This document shows positions 4,766 through 62,741 of a DNA stretch of 64,000 nt, one piece after another. Every line of letters starts with the position of its first letter. Positions within the stretch are counted from its first letter, which is position 1. Where the stretch lies: the IMG/VR virus record IMGVR_UViG_3300012988_000001, positions 62,001 through 126,000 of that record; one strand, 5' to 3'. Made by a program: the position numbers and the translations under genes. A model generated the notes under the pieces. It saw only the letters and a list, made by a program, of their open reading frames with translations. It made no database searches and was not told the DNA's origin.

Positions 4766-5262
4766 TTTTAGAAACACTAACACCAAAGCAAACGGCAGTT
4801 TGGATTAAGAATCTAAACAAAGTTATTGATTTGCGTTGTGCGGTTAAAACATATCATAATGATCACTACAAGCGGAATGAAAAACTATTCAATGACAGTT
4901 ACGGTTCTTTATATAAGTCATGGCATAGTATTTCAGATTTCGGTGACGTGGACATTTGTTGGGACGGACATTATCGGGTTCCCGGTTCTATTTGGTTTGG
5001 TGTTATTAAAAAGCTACCACCAATACCAGAACGACTTTTGAACTATAAATTATTCCTACGCTTCAAGTACAAGAACACTCGTGATACAGTACTAGCACGG
5101 TTGAAGCAGAAATGGGAGCGTTACGCAACTAAACCATTCCAAATCCAAGAGGGTGACTTAGAGATGTATCAAACCCTATTCGAATGGCACAGTGAATTGA
5201 AAGCTATCCTAGTAGAAGGAGGGGTATACGATGAAGCATTCGACTTGGATGAAGATCGCTAA
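4762..5262 (+). CDS. hypothetical protein
   Basis: 166-aa ORF, RBS GAGGAAGG. Confidence 0.75.
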   Translation: MILETLTPKQTAVWIKNLNKVIDLRCAVKTYHNDHYKRNEKLFNDSYGSLYKSWHSISDFGDVDICWDGHYRVPGSIWFGVIKKLPPIPERLLNYKLFLRFKYKNTRDTVLARLKQKWERYATKPFQIQEGDLEMYQTLFEWHSELKAILVEGGVYDEAFDLDEDR

Positions 5263-5701
5263 AGCGGTTGCTGATGAAAGTAAATGCATTTCACAACATG
5301 TAGGTGCTGTGATTGTCCAGAACGACCGTATTGTGAGTACTGGCTATAATGGAACACCAGAGAAGCAGCCTAACTGCTGTGACGTGAATAAGCACTTGGT
5401 GAACGGTGGGAAATTTCAGCAATGGAATACTGAGGAAGCAAAGCTAACTCATCACCACTGGAGTCAAATGCATGAGATTCATGCTGAGATGAACGCACTA
5501 TTGTACAGTGCACCTAAAGATCGTATTGGGGCAACACTTTATAGTACTCTTCAGCCCTGCTACACTTGTTCTCTATTGATTGCTGGAAGTGGAATTACAC
5601 GTGTAATTTATGAAAATGAATATCCTCGTACTCCTAAAGAAGCAATTGCAGTACTAAAGAATGCTGGGATTACTGTTAACAAACTATCTGATTTGGAGTA
5701 A
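5231..5701 (+). CDS. dCMP deaminase
   Basis: SKCISQHVGAVIV, STGYNGTP, HAEMNA and PCYTC zinc motifs. Confidence 0.93.
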   Translation: MKHSTWMKIAKAVADESKCISQHVGAVIVQNDRIVSTGYNGTPEKQPNCCDVNKHLVNGGKFQQWNTEEAKLTHHHWSQMHEIHAEMNALLYSAPKDRIGATLYSTLQPCYTCSLLIAGSGITRVIYENEYPRTPKEAIAVLKNAGITVNKLSDLE

Positions 5702-8006: not shown

Positions 8007-9116
8007 ATGAAAGAAAAAGTCTATGTTTATATTGGTCGCTTCCAAATGGCACACGTTGGTCATGAAGCAGTAATTACACACGCAGCATCTAAAGCAGACC
8101 GTCTAGTTCTACTAGTAGGTTCCGCAGATCTTGCACGTGATCCAAAAAACCCGTTCACTTTTGAAGAACGCAAATCCGTGCTAGAAGCAATGGCACAACG
8201 TATTGTTACTGAGCAATGGTCACAAGGCCGTTCAGTGAAGGTTGATATTCTACCAGTTCACGACTATACGTATAACAATACTAAGTGGTTAAAAGAAGTA
8301 CAAAACCAAGTACGTTCAGTTACTAACAGTACTGATATTACTTTGGCAGGTTGCCGTAAAGATGGCGATACCAGTACTTTCTACCTTGACTTCTTCCCGC
8401 AGTGGAAACAAGATTTTATCAATGAAGTATCAGAAGTATCACTAACCAAAGTTAGTCGTTCTAGCGGTGAAAAAACCGATTTGGGTTCTGTTGCCATCAG
8501 CAGCACTAAACTTCGTAATCAATACTTCAGTACTAAACAGGTTCCATCAGATCTCCCACAAGAAACTGCTGAGTTCCTAGAAAAGTTCAAAGTTCGTTCT
8601 CCTGAGATTCTTGACAATCTCGTGAATGAGCATAACTTCGTAGTACGTTACAAAGAACAAATGAACACACAGCTTCCTTACAACAACATTCCATTCCTAA
8701 CGGGTGATGCTCTAGTTGTATGTGCTGGTCACGTTCTACTTGTGAAGCGTCGTACTTATCCGGGTAAAGGTCTATGGGCGTTACCGGGCGGTTTCTTCGA
8801 TGCATGGGTTGATCAAACTCAAGTTGATACGGCTCTACGTGAACTAAAAGAAGAAACTAAGATTCAAGTACCTTACAAAACTCTAAAAGGTTCTATTGTG
8901 AAGGTCGATGAATTCGGTGATTTCGAGCGTTCTCTACGCTGGCGTCTAATCACCAAGTGTGCTTACATCAAACTTGATGGTTCCACACTACCAAATGTAA
9001 AAGGCAGTGATGACGCAGAGAAAGCGTTCTGGGTTCCTCTATCTGAGATTACCAAGAATCGCCACATGTTCTTTGAAGATCACTACTCAATCATTGACAC
9101 TATGATTGGTTTATAA
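8007..9116 (+). CDS. nadM: bifunctional NMN adenylyltransferase / ADP-ribose pyrophosphatase (NadM-Nudix)
   Basis: YIGRFQMAHVGH (HxGH), NPFTFEER, SSTKLR; Nudix box GGFFD...TALRELKEET; GSDDAEKAFW; FFEDH. Confidence 0.95.
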   Translation: MKEKVYVYIGRFQMAHVGHEAVITHAASKADRLVLLVGSADLARDPKNPFTFEERKSVLEAMAQRIVTEQWSQGRSVKVDILPVHDYTYNNTKWLKEVQNQVRSVTNSTDITLAGCRKDGDTSTFYLDFFPQWKQDFINEVSEVSLTKVSRSSGEKTDLGSVAISSTKLRNQYFSTKQVPSDLPQETAEFLEKFKVRSPEILDNLVNEHNFVVRYKEQMNTQLPYNNIPFLTGDALVVCAGHVLLVKRRTYPGKGLWALPGGFFDAWVDQTQVDTALRELKEETKIQVPYKTLKGSIVKVDEFGDFERSLRWRLITKCAYIKLDGSTLPNVKGSDDAEKAFWVPLSEITKNRHMFFEDHYSIIDTMIGL

Positions 9117-9710: not shown

Positions 9711-11189
9711 ATGAAAAATCTAAACGTAAACTTCATTCTAAACGTAGACAGCTACAAAACCGCTCACGGTATGATGATGAAAGAAGGTGTAGTTGCACTT
9801 GAATCAAACATCATTGCTCGTAAGCCTACTCCTTATGCTACACACGTAGTCATGATGGGTATCCAAATCTACCTACAAGAATATCTTGATATTACCATTA
9901 CAACTGCTGATATCGATGAAGCTGAAGAAGAAACCGCATCTCGCGGGGATTATTTCGACCGCCCATTCTGGGAACATATCGTAGAAGTACACAAAGGTCG
10001 TGTCCCTCTACATATCCGTGCTATTCCTGAAGGTACTGTTGTACCAGTAGGTATGCCACTAGTACGCTCTATGAGTACTGATCCAGCAGTATTAGTAATT
10101 GCTAGCTACATTGAAACTCAACTTCAACGTGCTATTCAGTTCCCAACAACTGTTGCTTCTAACGCTCGCAGCATCAAGTCCTTCTTGGCTGATACAATGG
10201 AACGTCACAGTGGTCAACGCTTCGTTGATTACCATCTACACAACTTTGGTGATCGCAGTGCATCTTGCTACGAAGCAGCATGGCTAGCAGGTGTTTCACA
10301 TGCTGTAGTGTTCAGTGGTTCTGATTGCCTAATGGCAAACCGTTACATTAAACACTACTATCACACTAAGAAAAACTATCTAAGCAGTGTGATGGCAACC
10401 GAGCATAGTGCTACCTGTTCTAACTCCGACGCAGACAAACGCGACGACTTCAATATGGCCCTAAAAATGGTTCGTATTTGGGAGAAAATGTGTGATGATT
10501 ATATTGCAAAAGGTTCCGTTGGTATTCCACCAATTGTATCAATTGTAATCGATACATATGATGCATATCGCTTTGTTCGTGAGTTTATCGGTACTCGTCT
10601 AAAAGCAACTATCCAAGAGATCGCTGCTAAATGTCCGGGTGCTAAACTTGTAATGCGTCCAGACAGTGGTGACCCAACAACTATGCCTATTGAAATCCTA
10701 GAGATTCTAGCAGACAAGTTCGGTACTACTCTAAATGCTAAAGGTATGCGTGTTCTACCATCTTACATTGGCGTAATCCAAGGTGATGGTATCGAAGAAG
10801 ACTCTATCCGTGCAATCGTTGCAAACCTTGACAAACACAATCTATCCCTAGAGAACATCGTGTTTGGTATGGGCGGTAAGCTAGTACATCCACCTAAAGG
10901 TCGCGATACATACTCATTCGCCATGAAAGGTTCTGCACAACAACTATCAGAAGGTACTTGGGAAGACCTATTCAAAGACCCAATCACTGACGTTGGTAAA
11001 CGTAGCCTACGTGGTCGTGTAACTACTTACAAGTGCAAACAAAGTGGTAAAATCATGGCTGAACGTGTAGAGCTAGCAGCAGTAAATCCATTCCTAGAAG
11101 ACATGATGGTTGATGTTTATAAGGATGGCGTAATTATGAACCTAAGCACTTTCGATGAAGTTCGCGAACGTGCAAACAAAGGTCTATAA
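9711..11189 (+). CDS. nadV: nicotinamide phosphoribosyltransferase (Nampt/NadV)
   Basis: DSYK, HNFGDRS, ATEHS, VIDTYD, MRPDSGDP, IQGDG, FGMGG, KDPITDVGKRS. Confidence 0.95.
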   Translation: MKNLNVNFILNVDSYKTAHGMMMKEGVVALESNIIARKPTPYATHVVMMGIQIYLQEYLDITITTADIDEAEEETASRGDYFDRPFWEHIVEVHKGRVPLHIRAIPEGTVVPVGMPLVRSMSTDPAVLVIASYIETQLQRAIQFPTTVASNARSIKSFLADTMERHSGQRFVDYHLHNFGDRSASCYEAAWLAGVSHAVVFSGSDCLMANRYIKHYYHTKKNYLSSVMATEHSATCSNSDADKRDDFNMALKMVRIWEKMCDDYIAKGSVGIPPIVSIVIDTYDAYRFVREFIGTRLKATIQEIAAKCPGAKLVMRPDSGDPTTMPIEILEILADKFGTTLNAKGMRVLPSYIGVIQGDGIEEDSIRAIVANLDKHNLSLENIVFGMGGKLVHPPKGRDTYSFAMKGSAQQLSEGTWEDLFKDPITDVGKRSLRGRVTTYKCKQSGKIMAERVELAAVNPFLEDMMVDVYKDGVIMNLSTFDEVRERANKGL

Positions 11190-12329: not shown

Positions 12330-12386
12330 TTGATAGGAAGATTATGGGGATGTATAATCCCCTATTAATTAATCAGGAGATACCTT

Positions 12387-12638: not shown

Positions 12639-13232
12639 ATGACTTGTATTATCGCTTATACTAATGGGGAATCATCTTTCATCGCTGGTGACAAACTAGG
12701 TTCCAATGGTTTCACTAAATCAGTAATGGTTGAACCAAAGATTTTCGAAAAGAAATTCATCAAAGAAGATGAGAACGGTATTAACCGCACAGAAGAAACT
12801 CTTGCAATGGGTGGTACAACCTCATTCCGTATGTTGCAACTACTAGACCATAATTTGGTCCTCCCAACTCAGGAGAAAGGTACAACCACTATTCAGTACC
12901 TAGTACATAAGGTTATCCCAGAAATCCGCAAACTATTCAAAGAAGAATGGGGTTCTCGTGATAATACACAAGAAGTTGGTGGTGGTCAGTTCATTATTCT
13001 TCACGACCATGTGATTTATGAAGTACAAGAAGACTTCTCGGTACTTCAGCCTAAGACTGACATTACTTCAGTTGGTAGCGGTACTTATCATGCAATTGCT
13101 TCTATGCAAGCATTTCTAATTGCAAATGAAAGTACTGGTAATGATCTAGTGGATCACGTTACTGATATTTTCAAAATTGTTAGTGATAATGTTACGAGTG
13201 TGTCAAGTGAATACGATATCTTCACCTACTAA
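12639..13232 (+). CDS. HslV/proteasome-like Ntn-hydrolase peptidase
   Basis: N-terminal M-T-C-I-I-A (Thr nucleophile after Met removal), AGD, conserved K in EPKIF, GG, SVGSG. Confidence 0.75.
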   Translation: MTCIIAYTNGESSFIAGDKLGSNGFTKSVMVEPKIFEKKFIKEDENGINRTEETLAMGGTTSFRMLQLLDHNLVLPTQEKGTTTIQYLVHKVIPEIRKLFKEEWGSRDNTQEVGGGQFIILHDHVIYEVQEDFSVLQPKTDITSVGSGTYHAIASMQAFLIANESTGNDLVDHVTDIFKIVSDNVTSVSSEYDIFTY

Positions 13233-13853: not shown

Positions 13854-14300
13854 ATGGCAGGAAACGGATTTGTCGCATTGAAGCTAGATGCGACACAAGG
13901 AAAAGAAATTAATAAAATATTTAAGACAGCAGGATTAAAATGCTTGACACCCTCAAAGTATCATGTTACTGTTATGTACGACGAGTCAGATCCAGAGATC
14001 GAATTGCTAAAGAATTCAAAATCGTACACAGCAACGATCACAGGTGTCGAGCGTTTGGGGAAGAAAGGGGCTAAGTATGAAGCCATTGCCCTCATCTTGA
14101 AGTCGCCAGAAATAGAAAAACGTCATAAAGAATTAAAGAATGCAGGATTTAAGCACAAGTACCCTGATATTAAAGTTCACATGAGTATTTTGTATCAACC
14201 AAAGGAAACCGATCAAGATATCATTGAACTTATATACAAGTTAGGAGTACTACCTAAAACTTTAAAATTTGGACAGGAATATATGGGAAAAACCAAGTGA
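13854..14300 (+). CDS. 2H phosphoesterase, T4 gp57B/Acb1-like anti-CBASS nuclease candidate
   Basis: YHVTVMY and VHMSILY (HxT/HxS) with GFVALKL, LILKSPEIEKRH and QEY positions matching the Acb1 layout as recalled. Confidence 0.8.
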   Translation: MAGNGFVALKLDATQGKEINKIFKTAGLKCLTPSKYHVTVMYDESDPEIELLKNSKSYTATITGVERLGKKGAKYEAIALILKSPEIEKRHKELKNAGFKHKYPDIKVHMSILYQPKETDQDIIELIYKLGVLPKTLKFGQEYMGKTK

Positions 14301-14309
14301 GGTGAAACA

Positions 14310-15071
14310 ATGGATTTACAAAAGTTTTTAGATAACAAAGGTAACCGTCGCATACTAGTAATTAGTGGTGCTGGTCTATCAGCAGAATCTGGTATCAGTA
14401 CTTTCAGATACGACGAAGATGCGTTATGGGAAAATACCAATGTAAACCATGTTTGTAATATCGCTAACCTTTCTACGCACTACTACAAAGTTCATTCCTT
14501 TTACAATACATTACGTGTGAACTTAGGAAGCAAAGAACCAAACGCTGCTCATTATGCTATATCAGAGCTAGAAGCAATTTATGGTGATGAGAAATTCTTA
14601 CATATTACGACGAACGTAGACGATCTATATGAACGTGCTGGCGGTACTGCTATGCACCTTCATGGTAATCTCCGTGAAATTGTAGAAGGATATTCTCTCG
14701 CTGATAATGCATACAATGTAATTGATGTTGGCTATACTCCTTATATCCCTAAAGAGGATGTATTTGCTAAACCTAATATTGTAATGTTCGGGGAGTCCGA
14801 ACGTTACGTTGATGGTAAACGTATTCCATTGTATGAAGATCGCAATAAAGTACTTGCATCCTTAACGGATCTAGATATGGTAATTGTGGTTGGAACTTCT
14901 GATTTAGTAGTCCGGTGGTCTGGAATGGTTGGAATGTCACCCGCTTATACATATCACGTCAACATTCGTAAGAATGAAAATGATTGGATGTTTACTGAGA
15001 AAGTGTACAAACCAGCTACCGAGGCCATACCAACAATAATTCAAGATATAAAGTTGAGGATGGAACTATGA
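14310..15071 (+). CDS. Sir2/CobB-family NAD-dependent deacylase
   Basis: SGAGLSAESGISTFR, EPNAAH, TTNVDDLYERAG, HLHG, KPNIVMFGE, VVGTS. Confidence 0.92.
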   Translation: MDLQKFLDNKGNRRILVISGAGLSAESGISTFRYDEDALWENTNVNHVCNIANLSTHYYKVHSFYNTLRVNLGSKEPNAAHYAISELEAIYGDEKFLHITTNVDDLYERAGGTAMHLHGNLREIVEGYSLADNAYNVIDVGYTPYIPKEDVFAKPNIVMFGESERYVDGKRIPLYEDRNKVLASLTDLDMVIVVGTSDLVVRWSGMVGMSPAYTYHVNIRKNENDWMFTEKVYKPATEAIPTIIQDIKLRMEL

Positions 15072-15436
15072 GTGTAGTTATCAGGACGTATATTCTATAC
15101 GGAGCTAAAGTAGATACAAGTAATTATGATAAAAATCGCTTTGAAGATGAACAGGACTTCATCGATTACATTTATGATGTAATCAACATTGATGACTGCC
15201 CGTACAAAGTAATCTATAATGAGATGGACAATTCTTATTACTACGGTTATATTATTGACGAAGCAAGTGATTCACATTGGGATACAAAGTACTTAAGTTC
15301 TCGTACTTTCGATGAGATCATTAGTGAAGTTAGTACAGAAGTGAAAGAATCCCTTGATTGGATGTTACATATTCACTTCAACATGCGTAGCGAGACTAGC
15401 GATATTAATTTCAGAATATTGACAGTTTATTGCTAA
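15068..15436 (+). CDS. hypothetical protein
   Basis: 122-aa coupled ORF. Confidence 0.7.
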   Translation: MSVVIRTYILYGAKVDTSNYDKNRFEDEQDFIDYIYDVINIDDCPYKVIYNEMDNSYYYGYIIDEASDSHWDTKYLSSRTFDEIISEVSTEVKESLDWMLHIHFNMRSETSDINFRILTVYC

Positions 15437-15445
15437 GAAGGTAAA

Positions 15446-16003
15446 ATGGGTTATGAACAAGTTCCATTCGGTACACGTAGCCAACAAGGTGATTGTGTAT
15501 TCGTTTGGATATATGCAAAAAACTGTACACCTTACCAAAACTATCCATACAATGACATTCCTAATGTAACTCTAGTACTATCAGAGTTACGTTGGGATGG
15601 CCTAATGGGTGCAGTTGGTGGGGCAGTAGAAACAGATGATGTTTCGTTAGAAGAGGCCGTTAAACGGGAAGCGTGGGAAGAGATTCACTATGATCTACCG
15701 ATTGACAGATTAGAACCACTACAAACGTTGAAGAACCGTTATGGATCTCACAACCATAGTTTCTCACTTGAAGTATCGTATGAGGAATTATTAGAGATTC
15801 GTAACCATGCTCATTTGGGCGAGCACTTTAGTGCTGAGAACGCTGGTGTAAACTTAATGCACATTTGCCGTTACCAGAAGCCTAATAAAGTTGAATGCGG
15901 ATATAATATCCTTTTGGAACAGTATTTCGTGGGTTCTTCACGTGAAGAGTTACAGTACTTAGTAGAGTCTAAGAACTTACTCGTAAATTACACGGACAAA
16001 TAA
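15446..16003 (+). CDS. Nudix hydrolase, NUDT16-like
   Basis: LRWDGLMGAVGGAVE...SLEEAVKREAWEE Nudix box plus YEELL, H..ENAG and LLEQYFVGSSREEL resembling NUDT16 RFDGRLGFPGG...LEELL...FLENSFIGSAREQL. Confidence 0.8.
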   Translation: MGYEQVPFGTRSQQGDCVFVWIYAKNCTPYQNYPYNDIPNVTLVLSELRWDGLMGAVGGAVETDDVSLEEAVKREAWEEIHYDLPIDRLEPLQTLKNRYGSHNHSFSLEVSYEELLEIRNHAHLGEHFSAENAGVNLMHICRYQKPNKVECGYNILLEQYFVGSSREELQYLVESKNLLVNYTDK

Positions 16004-16005
16004 TC

Positions 16006-16338
16006 ATGTATAAGATGTTCCTAGATGATTTGAGGGATGCTGAGAAGTACTACCCAAATCAGGGCTTCGTCACCATGAGAACGTATTATGACGCAGTTGA
16101 ATATGTCAAGGAACATGGTGTTCCCACCTTCATCTCGTTTGATCACGATCTTGCTGACGATGCTGAAAACGAAATGACCGGATACAGTTTTGCAAAATTT
16201 ATGATTGACTTCATCATCGATAATGAGTTAGAATGTATCTTCGATTATGTAGTGCACAGTGCCAACCCAGTGGGTAAGGCGAATATTGAGTGCTATTTGT
16301 ATAATGGTTTCAAATTCATTAGGAGCAATCATGATTAA
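16006..16338 (+). CDS. cyclic-phosphate-processing receiver-like (cREC) domain protein
   Basis: MFLDDLR, ISFDHDL, TGYSFAKF, HSANPVG. Confidence 0.8.
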   Translation: MYKMFLDDLRDAEKYYPNQGFVTMRTYYDAVEYVKEHGVPTFISFDHDLADDAENEMTGYSFAKFMIDFIIDNELECIFDYVVHSANPVGKANIECYLYNGFKFIRSNHD

Positions 16339-16639
16339 ATTTTTAGTAGCAGGTATTGTAACAGCAGGTATTTGTTTCCTTGTCTCATCTTGTGATGAAC
16401 AGATCGAGAACACACGTAAAAATAACATCTATTACAATACTGCAACAGTTGTAAGTATCGGTCAATGTCGTGACAGTAAATGTGCATATTCATATAAAAC
16501 CAGCGAAGGTAGTATTGAATACGGTACATCTGAAACTCCATTGACAACAGGGCAGATTGTCTATCAGCAATGCTGGACAGAGAAGGTTAAAGGCCCACAG
16601 TGTTATGTAAACTATGAACCTTCAAAACGCAACGATTAA
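16331..16639 (+). CDS. putative lipoprotein
   Basis: MIKFLVAGIVTAGICFLVSS-C signal with lipobox-like Cys; RBS AGGAG. Confidence 0.65.
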   Translation: MIKFLVAGIVTAGICFLVSSCDEQIENTRKNNIYYNTATVVSIGQCRDSKCAYSYKTSEGSIEYGTSETPLTTGQIVYQQCWTEKVKGPQCYVNYEPSKRND

Positions 16640-16692
16640 TCGTACCTAAATACGATTGAAGGGGCAAGGAAAGCCCCAATACATAGATAAGG

Positions 16693-18147
16693 ATGTTTAT
16701 GAAAAAATATGCTCTAGACACAAACGTTTTACTAAGCGACCCATCAGCTATTCAAGCATTTGATGCCGCTAATGTAATTCTACCATTCACAGTACTAGAA
16801 GAGTTGGATTCTATTAAGAGTCGCAATGTTGACGTGAGTCGTGATGCTCGTGTTGCAATCCGCAACATCTCCGATATTCTCGAAACTGCTTCTCATGAAG
16901 AAATCTCAGATACTGGAGTGGACGTTTCTAAGGTTCACAAACATATGAACCCAGCGAGCCGTCTATTCGTTATTACTGTCGAAGAAGCTGAAGCACTAAT
17001 TCGAACTACCCAGTTTGAAGAAGAACAATTTGCTAAAGTGCAAACTCTAATTAAGAGTACTGTACCTGATGACAAAATTATTCTAGTTGCTCTAGCTACT
17101 AGTTCAGTACTTGTAACTCGTGATATTAACATGCGTATTAAAGCACTAGCATATGGTGTTGAAGTACAAGATTATCGTCACGATGTAACAATCGAAGACT
17201 CAGACCTAATCCACACAGGCCACCATGAACTAGATTTCAATCTATGGGATACGGTTGGTGATTCTGTAGTATACAGTGCTACAGCAGGTCGTCGCACTTT
17301 CCAATATATTCCAGAAGACGCTATTAAACATCTTCTACCAGATAGCCTCTGCATCGGTGATTACCTCTACGATACCGCAGACGTATTATTTGTTTACGAT
17401 GGTTATGGTCGTCGCGAAGACGTTGATCCTACTGCGATTGACGACGATACTGATTACATGGTCTTCCAAGACGTGGGTCAAGCTCGTGCACTACGTGCTA
17501 AAGTATGGGATATCAAAGCCAAAAACATTCAACAAGCAATGGCGATTAACAGTATTCTAGATCCTGAAGTACACATTACTGTACTACTTGGTTCTGCTGG
17601 TACTGGTAAAACCTTAATCACTATTGCAACAGCACTAGAACTAACCCTAGAGAAGCGTTTATATGATCGTATTATCTTCTCTAAAACTCAAGACTCGCAG
17701 TTCGAAGAGATTGGTTTCTTACCGGGTACTGAAATGGAAAAAGTAATTCCATTCTGCGGTGCTGCAATTGATGCTCTAGAGTATCTACACAAAGATGATG
17801 CTAACCCACAAGGTAGTATCGAAGAGATCATGAAACGTAACGTCATGCAGTTTAAAGCATTGAACTTCATTCGTGGTCGTAGTTTCATCAACACGATTCT
17901 AATCGTTGATGAATTCCAAAACATTACTCCTGCACAGGCCAAAACAATCTTGACACGTGCTGGTGAAAACTGTAAAGTAATCATCATGGGTAACCTAAGT
18001 CAGATTGACTCCCGCTTCATCTCTCCAGTTAACAGTGGTCTAACCTACGTTACTGAAAAGTTCAAAGATTGGGAAGGTTGTCGCGTGATTGAGCTAGAAG
18101 GTGTTGTTCGTTCAGCCCTAGCAGCTTTCGCAGAAGAAAATCTATAA
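16693..18147 (+). CDS. phoH: PIN-PhoH (PhoH2/YlaK-like) protein
   Basis: N-terminal PIN LDTNVLL...EELD...DDKII...TRDINMRIKA; P-loop GSAGTGKT, RGRSF, DEFQN, GNLSQID, RSALA. Confidence 0.92.
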   Translation: MFMKKYALDTNVLLSDPSAIQAFDAANVILPFTVLEELDSIKSRNVDVSRDARVAIRNISDILETASHEEISDTGVDVSKVHKHMNPASRLFVITVEEAEALIRTTQFEEEQFAKVQTLIKSTVPDDKIILVALATSSVLVTRDINMRIKALAYGVEVQDYRHDVTIEDSDLIHTGHHELDFNLWDTVGDSVVYSATAGRRTFQYIPEDAIKHLLPDSLCIGDYLYDTADVLFVYDGYGRREDVDPTAIDDDTDYMVFQDVGQARALRAKVWDIKAKNIQQAMAINSILDPEVHITVLLGSAGTGKTLITIATALELTLEKRLYDRIIFSKTQDSQFEEIGFLPGTEMEKVIPFCGAAIDALEYLHKDDANPQGSIEEIMKRNVMQFKALNFIRGRSFINTILIVDEFQNITPAQAKTILTRAGENCKVIIMGNLSQIDSRFISPVNSGLTYVTEKFKDWEGCRVIELEGVVRSALAAFAEENL

Positions 18148-18153
18148 TTATTT

Positions 18154-18180
18154 GGGGGCAGCTATTGCCCCCTAGCTTTT
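18154..18180 (+). terminator. intrinsic terminator
   Basis: GGGGGCA-GCTAT-TGCCCCC-TAGCTTTT. Confidence 0.65.
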
Positions 18181-53463: not shown

Positions 53464-53710
53464 AGTACATCAAACTAGATTGAAGTGCTTTTTGAATCCT
53501 AAACTCAGGGCAATTCAATTCTGGACTGATGAACCATATGTAGTCGCTTCACGATTTGATAACGGTGTGTTCATAACTTACGTAATAACTCGTGTGAAGT
53601 ATGATAAGAAAACCATTTACAATAACGATTTAGTACTAACTAAAATTGAAGTACATAAACCGTTCTATAAAACTATTAAACACATTTGGAGAAAATTATG
53701 GCAGAACTAG
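53456..53710 (+). CDS. hypothetical protein
   Basis: 84 aa. Confidence 0.6.
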   Translation: MNRVHQTRLKCFLNPKLRAIQFWTDEPYVVASRFDNGVFITYVITRVKYDKKTIYNNDLVLTKIEVHKPFYKTIKHIWRKLWQN

Positions 53711-54954
53711 TAACTGAAGGTCGTAAACTTGTAACTATCCGTAAAATCAATGCGATTGATGCGATTGAGGGTGCTGACCTGATCGTAAAAGCAACCGTAG
53801 ATGGTTGGGAAGTAATCGTGAAAAAAGGTGAATTCGAAGTTGGTGATTTCTGTGTATTCTTCGAAATCGATTCCTTCCTACCAGTACAGACACAACAATT
53901 CGCATTCCTAGCTGGCAGCGGTACTAAACTCGATGAGAAAGAAGTAGAGCGTTTCCGTCTACGTACCAAGAAACTACGCGGTGTTGTCTCTCAGGGTCTA
54001 GCACTACCTGTATCTATGTTCGAAGCAGAACTAGAAGCAATTGATGAAGCTGCGGGTAATCACCCTGATTCTTATAGCCTAGCTATTCGTGATCAGCTAC
54101 TAGCACAGCTAGAAGATTCTCGTGAGGGTATTGAACAATTCCTACACGTAACTAAGTACGAACGTCCTGATGAGCGTAATGGCGGTACTGGTCTAGGTAA
54201 ATGTAAAGCGGCTGGTAACTTCCCTATCGTTATTCCTAAGACTGACGAAGACCGTATCCAGAACGTAATGGGTAAGTACATCCAGACTATGAAGGGTGTT
54301 GGTTTCCGTAAGTCTCTAAAACTAGATGGCTCTAGCCAAACTATTGCTTTCATGAGCAACCCAGATTACTACGTTGAGAAGGTTGATGATGAAGTACGTG
54401 CATGGAACGAAGAAACTCAAGAACTAGAAATCGTTGAAGTTAAACCGTATCCATTCCAGTGGGAAGATGGTCAGATTTCTATCTGCTCTCGTAACCTAGC
54501 ACTAAAATTCGATCCCGAATCTCACTTCTGGAAAGCAGCACTAAAAGATGATATCCCAGCACGTCTAAAAGAGTACTGTGTAGCTCATGATCGCCAGCTA
54601 GCTATCCAAGGTGAAGTAATGGGTCCGGGCATTCAGGGTAACCGTGAAGAACTAGAAGATTACCAGTTCTACGCATTCCGTATCTGGGACATTGACAACC
54701 GTTGCTTCCTTGATGACGGCGATTTCTTAACTCTTTGTGCACTACTAGGAGTAACTACAGTACCACAAGGTGATATTGTATACTTCTTCGATGAATATAC
54801 TTCTATCAAAGAAGCGGTAGAATCTGCTGACCATGCATCTATCAAACACAAGATCGCAGAAGGTGATGTATACAAGAGTGTTACTAAAGTGAATGGCGTA
54901 ACTGTGCACTTTAAAGTGATTAACAATAAATTCTTGCTAAAATGTGAGGACTAA
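53698..54954 (+). CDS. RNA ligase, DRB0094/Rnl5 family
   Basis: N-terminal OB module RKLVTIRKI..I..I.GAD...VDGW..IVKKGEF...VFFEIDS; motif I KLDGSS, QGEVMGPGIQGN, FYAFRIWD, EGDVYK, FKVINNKFLLK. Confidence 0.92.
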   Translation: MAELVTEGRKLVTIRKINAIDAIEGADLIVKATVDGWEVIVKKGEFEVGDFCVFFEIDSFLPVQTQQFAFLAGSGTKLDEKEVERFRLRTKKLRGVVSQGLALPVSMFEAELEAIDEAAGNHPDSYSLAIRDQLLAQLEDSREGIEQFLHVTKYERPDERNGGTGLGKCKAAGNFPIVIPKTDEDRIQNVMGKYIQTMKGVGFRKSLKLDGSSQTIAFMSNPDYYVEKVDDEVRAWNEETQELEIVEVKPYPFQWEDGQISICSRNLALKFDPESHFWKAALKDDIPARLKEYCVAHDRQLAIQGEVMGPGIQGNREELEDYQFYAFRIWDIDNRCFLDDGDFLTLCALLGVTTVPQGDIVYFFDEYTSIKEAVESADHASIKHKIAEGDVYKSVTKVNGVTVHFKVINNKFLLKCED

Positions 54955-55460: not shown

Positions 55461-55499
55461 GCAGTTTGTTTCAAAAACTTGGGACAAACTGCTTTTTTT
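55461..55499 (+). terminator. intrinsic terminator containing the -35 of the next promoter
   Basis: GCAGTTTGTTTCAA-AAAC-TTGGGACAAACTGC-TTTTTTT. Confidence 0.8.
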
Positions 55500-55509
55500 G
55501 TGCTATAAT
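55481..55509 (+). promoter_or_regulatory. GGGACA-class promoter (copy 5)
   Basis: GGGACA-17-TATAAT, TGTGC before the -10. Confidence 0.8.
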
Positions 55510-55571
55510 TAAGTTATTAAGAAATGAGTCAACACTCAAACCAAATTATCCATTTCTGAGAGGTAGAAAAT

Positions 55572-57106
55572 ATATGTCATTCAAACAAGCAGTTATCAAC
55601 GAAACCACCGCAGCAACCGACAACGTAGCTTTCACGGCTAACGGTGCAGTCTCAAACGCAAGCTCCCTCAACTTCCTAGTTGATCTATTTGCGATTCTAG
55701 GTGCAGTTCGTGGTAAAGATTTCTCTACCTTTGAGAATCTATTCGAACAAGCATATTCCATGAACCGTAAGCTAACGCTTCAAATGGTTCTATGGGTACG
55801 TGATGTTCGCGGTGGTGCAGGTGAGCGTGAAACCACACGTCAAATCCTTCGTCACCTAGAAGCAAACCATCAACAGGATCTAGTAGAACTAATCCCAGTA
55901 CTCGCAGAGTATGGTCGTTGGGATGATCTTCTAATTTTCACTAACGATAATGTGAAGAACTTTGCTTATGCAACTATTTCTGCTAATCTAAAAGCTGGTA
56001 ACGCACTATGTGCTAAATGGATGCCTCGCGTCTATAAGCTCAAAAAAGGTGCTGATGGTACAGTGAACAAAGAATCGGTTGCAAACCAGAACCGTATTGC
56101 GAACAATCAAATTGCTCGTGAGCTAATGCAAGTGATGGGTCTAAACGAACGTCAGTACCGCAAACTACTAGCTTCTCTAAGCACTACGGTTGAACAAAAC
56201 ATGTGTGCTAAAGATTGGTCTAGTATTGAGTACTCTCATGTTCCATCTGTAGCAATGAACCGCTACCGTGCTGCTTTCATGCGTAACGACGAAACTCGTT
56301 TCACTGAATTCGGTAACAAGGTAGAAGCTGGTGAAGTTAAGGTTAATGCTTCGGCACTATTCCCTTACGATGTAACCACTAAGTTCAAGTACGGTCAATC
56401 CGACAAGGTTTTTGTTGGTCAGTGGGATGCTCTACCAGACTACTTAAACGGTGCTTCAATCCTACCAATGTGTGATACCAGTGGTTCGATGGAATGTCCA
56501 GCAGGTGCATCAGGCTCCCTAACTTGTATGGATGTAGCGGTTTCTCTAAGCCTCTATATTTCTGACAAGCAGAAAGGTGCGTTCAAGGACGTGTTCTTGA
56601 ACTTCAGCGAGTCTCCCAACTTGTTCGTACTTAAGGGTAAGAACATCGAAGAGAAGTATCGCGACCTCTGCAAGTACAAGGGTGGTGCGTACTGGGGTGG
56701 TTCTACTGATATCGGTAAGGCTTTCCACCACATCCTAAAAACTGCTGTGAAGCAGAACGTGCAACAACAGGATATGCCTGAATATCTACTAATCTTTAGC
56801 GATATGGAGTTCGACTCTACATATGCTTGGGGTGGTGTAGAGAACAACGGTAACTGGGATGTAACTGCTTATGAGTATGCTAAACAGCTATACGCTCAGA
56901 ACGGTTATGAACTACCTAAAGTTATCTTCTGGAACCTAAATGGTCGTCCGGGTAACAACCCTGTCACGATCCACGATACTGGCACTGCTATGGTATCTGG
57001 TTTCAGTCCAGCAATCCTAACTGCAATCCTAGCTGGTGAGCAAGTAGATCCTGTATCTATCATGCTAGCAGCAATTGATAAGCCTCGCTATCAAGTGATT
57101 GCATAA
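55572..57106 (+). CDS. Ro60/TROVE-like HEAT-repeat plus vWA protein (DUF2828 type)
   Basis: RDVRGGAGER, YGRWDDLL, CAKWMPR, IEYSHVPSVAM, MIDAS CDTSGSM, IFSDMEFD, FWNL; ATG 55572 behind GAGGT. Confidence 0.82.
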
Positions 57107-61108: not shown

Positions 61109-62233
61109 ATGAAAAAATATATCGTCGGTGGTTTTGTACGTGATAAACTACTTGGCCTAAAACCAAAAGACAAAGACTACGTACTTGTAGGAGCCAAACA
61201 GCGTGATATTGATTATCTAACGTCCCAAGGCTACAAACAAGTAGGTGCTGACTTCCCTGTATACTTATCTCCAGCAGGTGATGAGTATGCTCTTGCACGT
61301 GTTGAGCGTAAGACGGGTAACGGATATAAAGGTTTTACTGTAGATACCGAAGGTGTAACTCTTGAACAAGATCTATTCCGTCGAGATCTCACTATCAACG
61401 CCATTGCCTACGATCCAGTATTCCAAAAACATATCGACCCATATGGTGGTAAGTCCGATCTACAGAATAAAGTACTACGTCATGTTAGTCCTCACTTTGC
61501 TGAAGACCCACTACGTATCCTACGTCTAGCTCGCTTTGCTGCTCGTTATAGCGATTTCACTATTCATAGCAGTACTGAAGAACTAGTACTCAACATGGTA
61601 AAAGAAGGTATGATTGACCATCTTACCCCGGAACGTGTATATGTAGAATTCGAAAAAGCTCTATCCGAGAATAATCCAAGTATTTTCTTCAAGAACCTAC
61701 GTAAATGGGGTGCTCTAGAACGCCTCCTACCGGGTTTGGAAGCCTTTAATAAGGCAGATGGGGAAATGCTCGATAAAATCACACAGACCAGCACAGAGGC
61801 TTACACGAACGATTTTCAGTGGTCTTTCCTACTATCCATGAGTCGTGGTGTAGTATCTAAAGATTATGCTATTGGTCAATTGAAACTACCTGCACAAGCA
61901 GTGAAGTTCTTCAAGTTTGTTACTGCTAACTTTGAAGAGATCAAGCTATTCAGGAAGAAAACACCTGAACAGATGGTTGAAATGCTAACTAAACTAAATA
62001 TCCACAACAACGGTGGTGAGGAATTCTTGTACAAAGTACTTGAGTACTTCAACATTCAGCGTGATACGGATGGTGAGCTAGAAGACCTAATTGTGAAAGT
62101 GTACGATAAATTTGAAGGCACTGTGATTGGTGATATTGACCAGATGTTGAAAGACGGAACTTTAGAGCCTAAAGAAATCCGTGCATATGTGTCGAATCTT
62201 CGCACAACTGAAGTTGCGAAAATGTTCTCATAA
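61109..62233 (+). CDS. cca: class II tRNA nucleotidyltransferase (CCA-adding), no HD domain
   Basis: YIVGGFVRD.LLG...KDKDY, EYALAR.E.K, DLFRRDLTINA, F.EDPLRILR.ARF, LTPERV..E. Confidence 0.93.
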   Translation: MKKYIVGGFVRDKLLGLKPKDKDYVLVGAKQRDIDYLTSQGYKQVGADFPVYLSPAGDEYALARVERKTGNGYKGFTVDTEGVTLEQDLFRRDLTINAIAYDPVFQKHIDPYGGKSDLQNKVLRHVSPHFAEDPLRILRLARFAARYSDFTIHSSTEELVLNMVKEGMIDHLTPERVYVEFEKALSENNPSIFFKNLRKWGALERLLPGLEAFNKADGEMLDKITQTSTEAYTNDFQWSFLLSMSRGVVSKDYAIGQLKLPAQAVKFFKFVTANFEEIKLFRKKTPEQMVEMLTKLNIHNNGGEEFLYKVLEYFNIQRDTDGELEDLIVKVYDKFEGTVIGDIDQMLKDGTLEPKEIRAYVSNLRTTEVAKMFS

Positions 62234-62297: not shown

Positions 62298-62741
62298 ATG
62301 CGATATACTTGCGGAATAATATTTTATCGTGATGGTCAGATACTTATAGGACATACAACCGGACAAGATCATTGGGACTTACCTAAAGGTAAAACTGAAG
62401 GTGAAGAAACATATAAAGAAGCGGCTGTTCGGGAGTGTTATGAAGAAACTGGTTTTGAGATATCCGAGAAGGATTTACTTTTTATTGGTGATGTATCATA
62501 CCGAAAAGGAAAAAGACTTATATTGTTTTTCTATACCGCTAGATATAAGCCTGAACCTAGTGAATTGAAATGTATCAGTACTTACACTAATAAGTACGGA
62601 CAGACTAAACCAGAATTGGATAAGTTTAGATACATTGATGTTGAGGACTGTGAATTGTATTTGACTAAACGAATGTGTAGCAGTATTGTCAAAGCTGTTA
62701 AACAATTCCAGAAAAATAAAGGAAAAGAGAATGGAAGTTAA
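62298..62741 (+). CDS. Nudix hydrolase
   Basis: WDLPKG..EG.ET..EAAVRECYEETG. Confidence 0.9.
   Translation: MRYTCGIIFYRDGQILIGHTTGQDHWDLPKGKTEGEETYKEAAVRECYEETGFEISEKDLLFIGDVSYRKGKRLILFFYTARYKPEPSELKCISTYTNKYGQTKPELDKFRYIDVEDCELYLTKRMCSSIVKAVKQFQKNKGKENGS

What the first reader, a model, noticed from the sequence alone, without database searches (positions are those of the whole stretch)
15446..16003. Phage Nudix enzyme resembling metazoan NUDT16 next to a sirtuin
Seen: similarity extends beyond the Nudix box: ELRWDGLMGAVGG, HSFSLEVSYEELL, H..AENAG and LLEQYFVGSSREEL line up with human NUDT16 segments as I recall them (MRFDGRLGFPGG, HFYAKRLTLEELL, HGLEVLG, FLENSFIGSAREQL). Established: NUDT16 decaps RNA, hydrolyses IDP and trims ADP-ribose from proteins. 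Inference: removes ADP-ribosylation or NAD caps generated by host defence.
Basis: partly seen in the sequence, partly recalled or inferred. Interest (0 to 1): 0.6.

Follow-up and report, generated by a model that had tools for sequence, protein, structure and literature searches.

The report
NUDT16-like Nudix in phage sirtuin operon
A giant phage of enterobacteria carries an apparently active pyrophosphatase that truly belongs to the same subfamily as the animal enzyme NUDT16, and it sits in a known operon with a sirtuin and a cyclic-phosphate enzyme, where it most likely breaks down ADP-ribose-type products; the relationship is real but its function is untested.

Summary
ORF 15446-16003 (+, 185 aa) is a Nudix hydrolase whose similarity to NUDT16 covers the whole protein. 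It passes the Pfam Nudt16-like cut-off. Human NUDT16 and Xenopus X29 are the top PDB hits by sequence (E 2.6e-9; profile 1.2e-11) and by fold (Foldseek E 1e-12; VIA Z 20.2 against 14.4 for the best generic Nudix; Atlas TM 0.83). The catalytic and metal-binding residues are intact.

It is not a recent animal import. Phage and bacterial (Campylobacterota) homologues form their own clade (support 97/96), sister to eukaryotic NUDT16. They carry Phe for His24, Glu/Asp for Gln170 and a shared insertion.

The gene lies in a tight operon: 2H/Acb1, CobB-like sirtuin, orf122, Nudix, cREC, lipoprotein, PIN-PhoH. The Sir2-Nudix-cREC core is syntenic across Rak2/121Q-like jumbo phages, and Nudix and cREC are fused in many of them. 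NARP2 NAD+ salvage genes lie upstream. Iyer et al. 2022 already described this neighbourhood and proposed RNA repair, without noting the NUDT16 link.

Best reading: it cleaves ADP-ribose-type products of the sirtuin/cREC module. A role in undoing host-defence ADP-ribosylation is possible but unsupported. Verdict: new member of a known kind, moderate interest, no biochemistry available.

The parts
15446..16003 (+). Nudt16-like Nudix hydrolase gene (185 aa), the finding itself
   Evidence: ORF. Pfam PF22327 3.8e-14 over the full model. PHROG 9999 4.6e-82. PDB NUDT16 2.6e-9. AF2 model pLDDT 90.8. Foldseek NUDT16 1.4e-12. VIA X29 Z 20.2.
15617..15688 (+). Nudix box (residues G58-H81: GGAVETDDVSLEEAVKREAWEEIH) with catalytic R74, E75, E78, E79
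   Evidence: Aligned to NUDT16 G59-G82 with E76/E79/E80. Invariant in 20 phage homologues and in all Nudt16-like rows.
15437..15441 (+). Shine-Dalgarno-like GAAGG, 4 nt before the ATG
   Evidence: Read directly from the sequence.
14310..15071 (+). CobB-like sirtuin (SIR2 family) that lacks the Zn-ribbon cysteines
   Evidence: Pfam SIR2 1e-22. PDB CobB-type deacylases 8e-27. NCBIfam CobB models hit but far below cut-off. One Cys only, with the HLHG, GAGxS and TTNVD motifs kept.
15068..15436 (+). orf122, unknown function; overlaps the sirtuin stop by 4 nt
   Evidence: No significant Pfam or PHROG hit. Phage-only clusters in the Atlas. Present in Munch, absent at this position in 121Q and BF.
16006..16338 (+). 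cREC (cyclic-phosphate processing receiver-like) domain protein; starts 2 nt after the Nudix stop and is fused to the Nudix in many relatives
   Evidence: Pfam PF20274 2.6e-22. Fusion proteins of about 300 aa carrying PF22327+PF20274. Only cREC in the genome.
16331..16639 (+). Small lipoprotein-like ORF (102 aa, LVSSC lipobox) overlapping the cREC stop by 8 nt
   Evidence: Annotated 'membrane protein' at the same position in 121Q and BF.
16693..18147 (+). PIN + PhoH (PhoH2-like RNase/helicase) protein, last gene of the unit
   Evidence: Pfam PIN_4 3.4e-22 and PhoH 3.2e-43. NCBIfam 'RNA 5'-3' helicase PhoH2' 7.5e-46, below cut-off.
13854..14300 (+). 2H phosphoesterase of the Acb1 family
   Evidence: Pfam Acb1 1.6e-16 (above cut-off) and 2_5_RNA_ligase2 5.8e-5. 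PHROG 755.
12346..12362 (+). Terminator-like hairpin upstream of the unit
18154..18172 (+). Strong terminator-like hairpin (8 bp, 6 GC, T-run) 7 nt after the PIN-PhoH stop; marks the 3' end of the unit
8007..9116 (+). NadM-like NMN adenylyltransferase fused to a generic Nudix (half of the NARP2-type NAD+ salvage pair)
9711..11189 (+). Nicotinamide phosphoribosyltransferase (NAMPT/NadV), the other half of the salvage pair
   Evidence: Pfam NAMPT_N + NAPRTase. In phage BF it directly abuts the sirtuin block.

Best explanation
The gene encodes an active, Mg2+-dependent Nudix pyrophosphatase of the NUDT16-like subfamily. It is the pyrophosphate-cleaving step of a phage operon built around a CobB-like sirtuin and a cREC phosphoesterase. 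Proposed sequence of events: the sirtuin uses NAD+ and releases an ADP-ribose-linked product. Iyer et al. propose ADP-ribose 1''-2'' cyclic phosphate, made while removing a 2'-phosphate from cleaved RNA, the job Tpt1/KptA does elsewhere. Plain ADPr or O-acyl-ADPr are alternatives. cREC and/or the 2H enzyme then open or remove the phosphate. The Nudix splits the adenosine-diphosphate-ribose moiety into AMP plus a phosphoribose product, which clears the by-product and recycles the nucleotide. The NAMPT/NMNAT pair upstream resupplies NAD+. Shown by computation: family membership, an intact catalytic site, operon structure, conserved synteny and the Nudix-cREC fusion. Inferred: the substrate, the order of steps and the sirtuin's chemistry.
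For: Family and fold. Active-site residues equivalent to NUDT16 R50, D52, G59, E76, E79, E80 and E136 are invariant in all phage homologues (residue roles from PMC4485890 and PMC6459841). The protein is therefore unlike the inactive paralogue TIRR/Syndesmos. Operon: spacers of -8 to +13 nt from orf147 to the lipoprotein gene, bracketed by terminator-like hairpins. Synteny of Sir2-Nudix-cREC holds in Munch, PHA46, 121Q, UB, PBECO4, BF, GAP32, CBB, fHe-Yen9-04 and RaK2-like phages (coordinates; annotations). Nudix-cREC fusions occur in about half of the homologue clusters. The phage has no Tpt1/KptA and no Macro domain, but it does have an RNA ligase and a CCA-adding enzyme. NAD+ salvage genes lie upstream, and directly adjacent in BF. 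In independent lineages a Nudt16-like gene sits with NAMPT and PIN-PhoH (L008) or overlaps a CCA-adding/HD enzyme (L010). This neighbourhood and the RNA-repair/ADPr>P proposal are published (PMC9503650, section 3.7.3). Human NUDT16 acts on ADPr, on protein-linked ADPr and on the ADPr that the Tpt1 homologue TRPT1 puts on RNA ends (PMC6459841, PMC6582358).
Against: No enzyme of this module has been assayed. The sirtuin's Tpt1-like activity and cREC's cyclic-phosphodiesterase activity are predictions only. The sirtuin occurs in about 1,000 phage records, against 76 for this Nudix, so the sirtuin does not need this Nudix. Aeromonas T4-like phages and Sulfuricurvum carry the Nudix without Sir2 or cREC nearby. 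The RNA ligase lies 38 kb away, and there are no tRNA genes in the window. The base-contacting residues differ from NUDT16 (Phe for His24, Glu for Gln170), so substrate preference cannot be carried over. The 2H protein falls in the Acb1 anti-CBASS family, which fits a counter-defence reading equally well.
Confidence: 0.45

Rival explanations
1. RNA 5'-end decapping enzyme. This would either destabilise host RNAs or prepare RNA ends for repair, working with the PIN-PhoH RNase/helicase.
For: NUDT16 and X29 are its closest structural relatives over the full length, including the non-core decorations. NUDT16 cleaves NAD, FAD and dpCoA caps (PMC7337524, abstract listed) and TRPT1-made ADPr on RNA ends (PMC6582358). 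It shares an operon with a PhoH2-like RNA helicase/PIN nuclease. A distant homologue overlaps a CCA-adding enzyme gene.
Against: There is no evidence of RNA binding, and electrostatics and dimer formation were not tested. The fusion partner cREC points to a small phospho-ester substrate. Bacteria already decap NAD-RNA with NudC, and this phage has three other Nudix genes.
Confidence: 0.2
2. Counter-defence enzyme. It destroys ADP-ribose-derived immune signals (Thoeris cyclic ADPr isomers, His-ADPR and similar) by cutting their pyrophosphate. It would act together with the Acb1-like 2H enzyme (cyclic oligonucleotides), cREC and the NARP2 NAD+ salvage genes as an anti-defence island.
For: The 2H neighbour passes the Pfam Acb1 (anti-CBASS) cut-off. 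NARP2-type genes lie just upstream. Iyer et al. suggest that phage Nudix, Macro and NADAR domains mainly counter low-molecular-weight ADPr signals (PMC9503650, section 3.7.4). Enzymatic degradation of ADPR-based signals by other phage proteins has been reported (PMC13232231, abstract).
Against: A phage-encoded NAD+-consuming sirtuin at the centre of the operon is not explained by this reading. 121Q-like phages keep Sir2-Nudix-cREC but lack the 2H gene. No published anti-defence Nudix of this clade turned up in the paper searches.
Confidence: 0.15
3. One reading: it trims ADP-ribose from proteins or DNA that host defence systems have ADP-ribosylated.
For: NUDT16 processes protein-linked mono- and poly-ADPr (PMC6459841). 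The residue aligned to the 'mouth' residue Phe61 is small in this phage (Ala60), which could admit bulky conjugates.
Against: Nudix cleavage leaves a phosphoribose tag, so the target is not restored (PMC6582358). The phage has no Macro or other glycohydrolase to finish the job. The context genes are phage-encoded NAD/RNA enzymes, not defence-linked. Position 60 is variable in both the phage and the eukaryotic clades.
Confidence: 0.1
4. Nucleotide-pool house-cleaning: hydrolysis of (deoxy)inosine di- and triphosphates, as shown for human NUDT16, to protect replication of the large phage genome.
For: IDP/dIDP is the best-characterised small substrate of NUDT16 (PMC4485890). A dCMP deaminase gene lies in the same region.
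Against: The residues that read the hypoxanthine base differ (Gln170 to Glu, His24 to Phe). Conserved linkage and fusion to cREC and the sirtuin are not explained by this reading.
Confidence: 0.05

Closest known systems
Human NUDT16 / Xenopus X29 (U8 snoRNA-decapping enzyme; Pfam PF22327 Nudt16-like)
   Same: Same subfamily by full-length HMM, by PDB sequence search and by fold (TM 0.76-0.83, Z 20.2 over 172 residues). It keeps the Nudix box glutamates, the RFDG-type Arg/Asp pair, the third metal ligand (E131 = E136) and the C-terminal F-[IV]-G-[ST]-x-[RK]-x-E/Q-L helix.
   Different: Only 23-25% identical. It lies in a separate phage/bacterial clade (97/96 support). Phe replaces the base-stacking His24, Glu replaces Gln170 and His replaces Asp132. 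It has an extra ~9-residue 'C-x-P-Y' insertion after strand 1 and lacks the eukaryotic N- and C-terminal extensions. Dimerisation and all activities are untested.
Sirtuin + 2H + Nudix + cREC + PIN neighbourhood of jumbo phages (Iyer, Burroughs, Anantharaman, Aravind 2022, Viruses 14:1977, section 3.7.3; exemplar Serratia phage BF)
   Same: This window holds that same neighbourhood, gene for gene. BF has the homologous genes in the same order, with Nudix and cREC fused.
   Different: The paper does not assign the Nudix to the NUDT16 subfamily and says most phage Nudix domains fall into NudE-like or NadM-like clades. Here the Nudix is neither. This phage also has an extra 122-aa ORF between the sirtuin and the Nudix, and its Nudix and cREC are separate genes.
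Phage T4 NudE.1 (FAD, Ap3A, ADP-ribose hydrolase)
   Same: It is a phage Nudix that acts on adenosine-diphosphate-X compounds. Some homologues of the present protein (Aeromonas phage PX29) are annotated 'NudE'.
   Different: T4 NudE.1 matches only the generic NUDIX model. Its BLASTP similarity to the present protein is confined to the Nudix box (E 4e-4), and it falls outside the Nudt16-like group in the tree (99/98). A NudE-type Nudix is encoded elsewhere in this same phage (62298-62741).
TIRR / Syndesmos (NUDT16L1)
   Same: Same fold family (Foldseek 2e-11, profile 2.5e-6).
   Different: TIRR is a catalytically inactive vertebrate paralogue (PMC2566886). The phage protein keeps every catalytic residue.
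Yeast/plant tRNA-splicing by-product pathway (Tpt1, then Cpd1 2H phosphodiesterase, then Poa1 macro, then Ysa1 Nudix)
   Same: It has the same logical set of activities: an NAD+-dependent transferase, a cyclic phosphodiesterase and an ADPr pyrophosphatase (own knowledge of the pathway; the analogy was drawn in PMC9503650).
   Different: Here a sirtuin would replace Tpt1, and cREC would replace or add to the 2H/macro steps. None of this has been tested.

Membership tests
Nudt16-like subfamily (Pfam PF22327; NUDT16/X29) | Full-length match to the family HMM above the curated cut-off | tested here: met
   53.4 bits against cut-off 27, residues 17-179 on model positions 2-161 of 161. It is the only match in the 366-kb genome. 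Caveat: the model rings weakly in 6 of 14 control genomes and passes the cut-off in 1, so this test alone is not fully specific.
Nudt16-like subfamily (Pfam PF22327; NUDT16/X29) | Closest solved structures are NUDT16/X29, clearly separated from generic Nudix enzymes | tested here: met
   Foldseek ranks 1-39 are all NUDT16/X29/TIRR (1.4e-12 to 5e-9, TM 0.69-0.76), and the next hit is 3.5e-7 at TM 0.56. VIA-align gives X29 Z 20.2 over 172 aa against 14.4 over 128 aa. The Atlas gives chordate NUDT16 TM 0.83.
Nudt16-like subfamily (Pfam PF22327; NUDT16/X29) | Nudix box catalytic residues (E76, E79, E80) plus R50, D52 and the distal metal ligand E136 | tested here: met
   R49, D51, E75, E78, E79 and E131 align to these residues and are invariant in phage, bacterial and eukaryotic members.
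Nudt16-like subfamily (Pfam PF22327; NUDT16/X29) | Base-recognition residues His24 (stacking) and Gln170 (H-bond), described as highly conserved in NUDT16 homologues | tested here: not met
   Phe19 aligns with His24 and Glu168 with Gln170. All phage and bacterial members have Phe and Glu/Asp/Gln, while all well-aligned eukaryotic rows have His and Gln/Asn (residue roles from PMC4485890). This separates a sister subgroup. It does not exclude family membership, but it forbids carrying over substrate specificity.
Nudt16-like subfamily (Pfam PF22327; NUDT16/X29) | Homodimer that forms the substrate 'mouth' | not tested
Nudt16-like subfamily (Pfam PF22327; NUDT16/X29) | Hydrolysis of capped RNA, IDP or ADPr | not testable with these tools
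   Needs biochemistry.
Metazoan NUDT16 orthologue group (Taylor & Peculis 2008) | Branches within the eukaryotic NUDT16 clade | tested here: not met
   The 14 phage and bacterial rows form one side of a branch with 97/96 support and length 2.2, against 10 eukaryotic rows.
Jumbo-phage sirtuin-2H-Nudix-cREC-PIN module (Iyer et al. 2022) | Co-directional neighbourhood of sirtuin, 2H, Nudix, cREC and PIN-domain genes | tested here: met
   All five are present at 13854-18147 with spacers of -8 to +53 nt. The order is the same in Serratia phage BF, the paper's exemplar.
T4 NudE.1-type phage Nudix | Specific similarity to T4 NudE.1 beyond the Nudix box | tested here: not met
   BLASTP E 4e-4 over 49 residues of the Nudix box only. 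T4 NudE.1 does not match PF22327. The two are separated in the tree at 99/98.
NadM-type ADPr pyrophosphatase (NMNAT-Nudix fusion) | Fusion to an NMN adenylyltransferase domain | tested here: not met
   The protein is a standalone 185 aa. The NadM-type protein is a different gene at 8007-9116.
Known anti-phage defence components (PADLOC 2.0) | Match to any defence-system model | tested here: not met
   No hit for the Nudix, sirtuin, cREC, 2H or orf122.

The most novel reading that the evidence does not exclude
NUDT16, described in the literature as a metazoan protein, has a prokaryotic/viral sister family. In jumbo phages that family would be the ADPr-pyrophosphatase arm of a Tpt1-independent RNA-repair chemistry: a zinc-less CobB-like sirtuin transfers an RNA 2'-phosphate to NAD+, and the resulting ADP-ribose cyclic phosphate is dismantled by a (often fused) cREC-Nudix pair. 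This would be a new enzymatic route for RNA end-healing and a hint at the ancestral function of NUDT16.
Probability: 0.2. Interest if true: 0.7.

Novelty: new member of a known kind. Interest (0 to 1): 0.4.

Why it matters
NUDT16 is studied as an RNA-decapping, IDP-cleaning and ADP-ribose-trimming enzyme of animals, and the founding survey found orthologues only in metazoans (PMC2566886). This phage protein is a true, probably active member of a phage/bacterial sister clade. That gives a simple, tractable system (one operon, with natural Nudix-cREC fusions) in which to ask what this subfamily originally did. It also sharpens a published but untested prediction about a sirtuin-centred NAD+/RNA-repair module that is widespread in large phages of Enterobacteriaceae, several of which are being considered for therapy. 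The practical gain is a short, specific substrate panel for testing. The finding does not reveal a new kind of system: both the family assignment (Pfam and automatic UniProt names) and the neighbourhood (Iyer et al. 2022) are already on record.

Tried and rejected
1. Megablast of the module DNA against the phage collection found no match. The phage is only protein-level related to Munch, PHA46 and similar phages.

2. Two pattern scans of bacterial genome contigs found no relatives. The back-translated patterns were specific to the jumbo-phage clade. This says nothing about absence in bacteria, and a Sulfuricurvum homologue was later found through the protein word search.

4. Complex prediction on Nudix + cREC returned 'no answer' (score 0.00, controls not run). 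It is evidence neither for nor against binding.

5. The viral-contig scan with the distant clade mostly returned generic Nudix genes that match only the Nudix box. A local HMM kept only L011-L014 and L018 as full-length members. L018 showed no module genes within 11 kb.

6. A promoter-like site at 15419-15447 (11 of 12 matches) ends on the Nudix start codon. It was rejected as probably chance, because promoter-like sites in the region are no more frequent than in shuffles (53 against 44 +/- 7).

7. The idea that the protein is a T4 NudE.1 orthologue, as some relatives are annotated, was rejected.

8. A recent transfer from animals was rejected by the tree.

9. Specific kinship with ASFV g5R or poxvirus-type viral decapping enzymes was not supported: g5R scores Z 12.1, the same as generic Nudix enzymes.

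10. The exhaustive HMMER search of 1.84 billion representatives was not run. The operators flagged it as costly, and no claim here rests on the absence of relatives.

11. The read-mapping tools were not used.
Full report
**What is in the sequence.** The window is part of a complete 366,160-bp phage record with direct terminal repeats. At protein level it is related to Rak2/121Q-like jumbo phages of Enterobacteriaceae. The Nudix protein is 84% identical to those of Salmonella phages Munch, PHA46 and SE_PL, 75% to GAP32 and CBB, 70% to Serratia phage BF, 54% to RaK2 and 49% to 121Q. There is no DNA-level match. ORF 15446-16003 (+) encodes 185 aa, is preceded by a GAAGG ribosome-binding site, and starts 9 nt after the stop of the upstream gene.

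**Check of the observation.** The match runs over residues 33-179 at E 2.6e-9. TIRR/Syndesmos score 0.06, and every other Nudix scores about 1 or worse. A profile of 20 phage homologues raises this to 1.2e-11 for X29 and NUDT16 and 2.5e-6 for TIRR, with the next Nudix at 0.005. Pfam places the protein in Nudt16-like (PF22327) at 53.4 bits against a cut-off of 27, covering the whole model. The generic NUDIX model scores only 32 bits.

The phage has four Nudix genes, and only this one matches the Nudt16-like model. An AlphaFold model built from the alignment is confident (pLDDT 90.8, pTM 0.88). By Foldseek its 39 best PDB matches are all NUDT16, X29 or TIRR (E 1.4e-12 to 5e-9, TM 0.69-0.76), followed by a gap of two to five orders of magnitude to generic Nudix enzymes. 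An independent aligner run against 48,161 representative chains gives X29 Z 20.2 over 172 residues, against Z 14.4 over 128 residues for the best generic Nudix. ASFV g5R scores 12.1. In the ESM Atlas the best structural match is chordate NUDT16 at TM 0.83 over 176 residues.

**Active site.** I mapped residues using the alignments, and took residue roles from the NUDT16 structure papers (PMC4485890, PMC6459841). The following NUDT16 residues are kept:
- the phosphate-binding R50 (here R49) and its partner D52 (D51)
- G59 (G58)
- the Nudix glutamates E76/E79/E80 (E75/E78/E79)
- the distal metal ligand E136 (E131)
- I164 and S166 on the C-terminal helix (V162, S164)

All are invariant or conservatively replaced in 20 phage homologues. 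The protein is therefore predicted to be an active hydrolase, unlike the inactive paralogue TIRR.

Three positions differ systematically. Phe19 replaces the base-stacking His24. Glu168 replaces Gln170, which reads the purine edge. His127 replaces Asp132. The 'mouth' residue Phe61 is Ala60 here, but that position varies in both clades. Substrate preference cannot be transferred from NUDT16.

**Evolutionary placement.** Word-indexed searches found about 55 clusters of close homologues, all carrying PF22327. They also found a clade in Aeromonas T4-like phages, where the protein is mis-annotated NudE or automatically named 'U8 snoRNA-decapping enzyme'. Further hits were unnamed phage-like contigs (P0054, P0055) and chromosomal genes of Sulfuricurvum (Campylobacterota), which lie next to recQ with no phage context. 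The Atlas lists a Campylobacterota cluster of 87 members, 99% of which carry PF22327.

I obtained eukaryotic orthologues from sponges, cnidarians, insects, fish and birds through a bridging sequence. In a maximum-likelihood tree of 26 sequences, the Nudt16-like proteins separate from T4 NudE.1-type Nudix at 99/98. The 14 phage and bacterial sequences form one side of a branch at 97/96 (length 2.2) against the 10 eukaryotic ones. The jumbo-phage clade is supported at 100/97. The phage and bacterial proteins also share a ~9-residue insertion after strand 1 and the Phe/His/Glu substitutions listed above.

So this is a sister subfamily, not a recent acquisition from animals. The direction of any ancient transfer cannot be read from an essentially unrooted tree. 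The founding survey of Nudt16 reported orthologues only in metazoans and does not mention prokaryotes or phages (PMC2566886). I found no paper that links phage Nudix proteins to NUDT16.

**Genomic context.** The gene lies in a co-directional block bounded by terminator-like hairpins at 12346-12362 and 18154-18172. The block contains, in order:
- HslV-like peptidase (12639-13232)
- two small ORFs
- a 2H phosphoesterase that passes the Pfam Acb1 cut-off (13854-14300)
- a SIR2-family protein (14310-15071)
- orf122 (15068-15436)
- the Nudix (15446-16003)
- a cREC domain protein (16006-16338)
- a lipoprotein-like ORF (16331-16639)
- a PIN + PhoH protein (16693-18147)

Spacers from orf147 to the lipoprotein gene are -8 to +13 nt.

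The Sir2-Nudix-cREC order is kept in every genus sampled (coordinates; annotations). The 121Q-like phages lack the 2H gene and orf122, so the conserved core is Sir2-Nudix-cREC-membrane protein-PIN/PhoH. In GAP32, CBB, BF, fHe-Yen9-04 and many metagenomic relatives, Nudix and cREC are a single ~300-aa polypeptide. This is strong evidence that the two act on the same pathway.

Upstream lie a NadM-like NMNAT-Nudix fusion (8007-9116) and NAMPT (9711-11189), which together form the NARP2-type NAD+ salvage pair. In BF they abut the block directly.

The sirtuin is closest to CobB-type deacylases (E. coli CobB 1e-26) but scores far below the NCBIfam equivalog cut-offs. It keeps the GAGxS, TTNVD and HLHG motifs but has a single cysteine, so the Zn ribbon of canonical sirtuins is missing. 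The same holds in Munch and BF. This sirtuin clade occurs in about 1,000 phage records, including T5, rV5-like and KVP40-like phages. The Nudix occurs in 76.

The phage has no Tpt1/KptA and no Macro domain. It has one cREC, an RNA ligase at 53686-54954 and a CCA-adding enzyme at 61109-62233. None of the module proteins matches a PADLOC defence model, apart from weak P-loop hits of PhoH.

Two independent lineages give further context. One Nudt16-like gene (31% identical) sits between a NAMPT gene (49% identical to this phage's) and a PIN-PhoH gene (41% identical), without Sir2 or cREC (L008). Another overlaps the end of a CCA-adding enzyme with an HD domain (L010).

[quoted passage not shown] They propose that the sirtuin acts like KptA/Tpt1 to remove RNA 2'-phosphates, and that 2H, cREC and Nudix resolve cyclic phosphates or process the ADPr>P by-product. 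The cREC domain was defined in their jumbo-phage survey (PMC7824862). [quoted passage not shown] The present analysis shows that the sirtuin-linked Nudix is a third clade, the NUDT16-like one. At database level the assignment already exists, through the Pfam family and automatic UniProt names.

**Mechanism.** The best-supported reading is that the protein is the pyrophosphatase of this NAD+/ADPr module. It would cleave an adenosine-diphosphate-ribose-type product generated by the sirtuin and trimmed by cREC/2H into AMP plus a phosphoribose derivative. The supporting evidence is:
- the intact catalytic site
- the operon structure and the fusion with cREC
- the absence of Tpt1 and Macro, which would otherwise do these jobs
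- the adjacent NAD+ salvage genes
- the known ability of NUDT16 to accept ADPr whose distal ribose carries a large substituent, including ADPr placed on RNA ends by the Tpt1 homologue TRPT1 (PMC6459841; PMC6582358)

The substrate, the order of steps and the sirtuin's chemistry are inferences.

The rivals are listed with their tests in the report sections.

**Verdict.** The finding is real and correctly read at the family level. It is a new member of a known kind: a known Pfam subfamily inside a published phage gene neighbourhood. Two modest additions come from this work. First, the sirtuin-linked phage Nudix belongs to a phage/bacterial sister clade of NUDT16 with diagnostic substitutions. Second, that clade recurs with NAD+ salvage, PIN-PhoH and CCA-adding genes in independent lineages. 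Function remains untested.

**Limits.** The trees rest on about 190 columns and a small taxon sample. The bacterial distribution was not surveyed exhaustively. The complex prediction gave no verdict and is not used as evidence.

Noticed in passing
window 8007-9116 and 9711-11189: A NARP2-type NAD+ salvage pair lies just upstream of the module: a NadM-like NMN adenylyltransferase fused to a generic Nudix, and NAMPT. In Serratia phage BF these genes abut the sirtuin block directly.
   Followed up: partly
window 13854-14300: The 2H phosphoesterase that Iyer et al. treat as an RNA-repair enzyme passes the Pfam Acb1 (anti-CBASS nuclease) cut-off. PHROG and RefSeq call it 'RNA ligase', which is a misnomer for a 2H/LigT-type protein.
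   Followed up: partly
window 14310-15071: The CobB-like sirtuin keeps its NAD-binding motifs and catalytic His but has only one cysteine, so the Zn-ribbon cysteines of canonical sirtuins are missing. The same is true in Munch and BF. This hints at a function other than deacylase. The clade is present in about 1,000 phage records, including T5.
   Followed up: partly
window 15068-15436: A 122-aa acidic ORF of unknown function is inserted between the sirtuin and the Nudix and overlaps the sirtuin stop by 4 nt. It is present in Munch but not at this position in 121Q or BF. It has only phage relatives and no recognisable fold match.
   Followed up: partly
window 61109-62233 and 62298-62741; also L010:2786-4631: A CCA-adding tRNA nucleotidyltransferase sits directly upstream of a second, NudE-type Nudix in this phage. 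In an unrelated metagenomic contig a CCA-adding/HD enzyme overlaps a Nudt16-like gene. This recurrent Nudix-CCA pairing is unexplained.
   Followed up: partly
window 53686-54954 and 55466-57106: An RNA ligase (PHA02142 OB fold + RNA_ligase domain) is followed by a DUF2828/DUF7788 protein. This may be a separate RNA-repair cassette, 38 kb from the sirtuin module.
   Followed up: no
window 16331-16639: A small cysteine-rich ORF with a lipoprotein-type signal (…LVSSC) overlaps the cREC stop by 8 nt. It is conserved as a 'membrane protein' at the same position in 121Q and BF. Its role in a nucleotide-processing operon is unclear.
   Followed up: no
L004:1474-2034 (Aeromonas phage PX29): The gene annotated nudE in PX29 and related Aeromonas T4-like phages is a Nudt16-like protein, not an orthologue of T4 NudE.1. 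It lies between rIIB and ndd in the early region.
   Followed up: yes
L006:6001-6573 (Sulfuricurvum MAG contig): A bacterial chromosomal Nudt16-like gene sits divergently next to recQ, with no phage, Sir2 or cREC genes nearby. The Atlas lists a Campylobacterota cluster of 87 such proteins.
   Followed up: partly
L008:2871-9948: A divergent phage-like contig keeps the order NAMPT … Nudt16-like … PIN-PhoH. Between them it has a radical-SAM-like gene instead of the sirtuin and cREC.
   Followed up: partly
window 5231-5701: A dCMP deaminase gene lies a few kb upstream, in the same position relative to the module as in phage 121Q.
   Followed up: no
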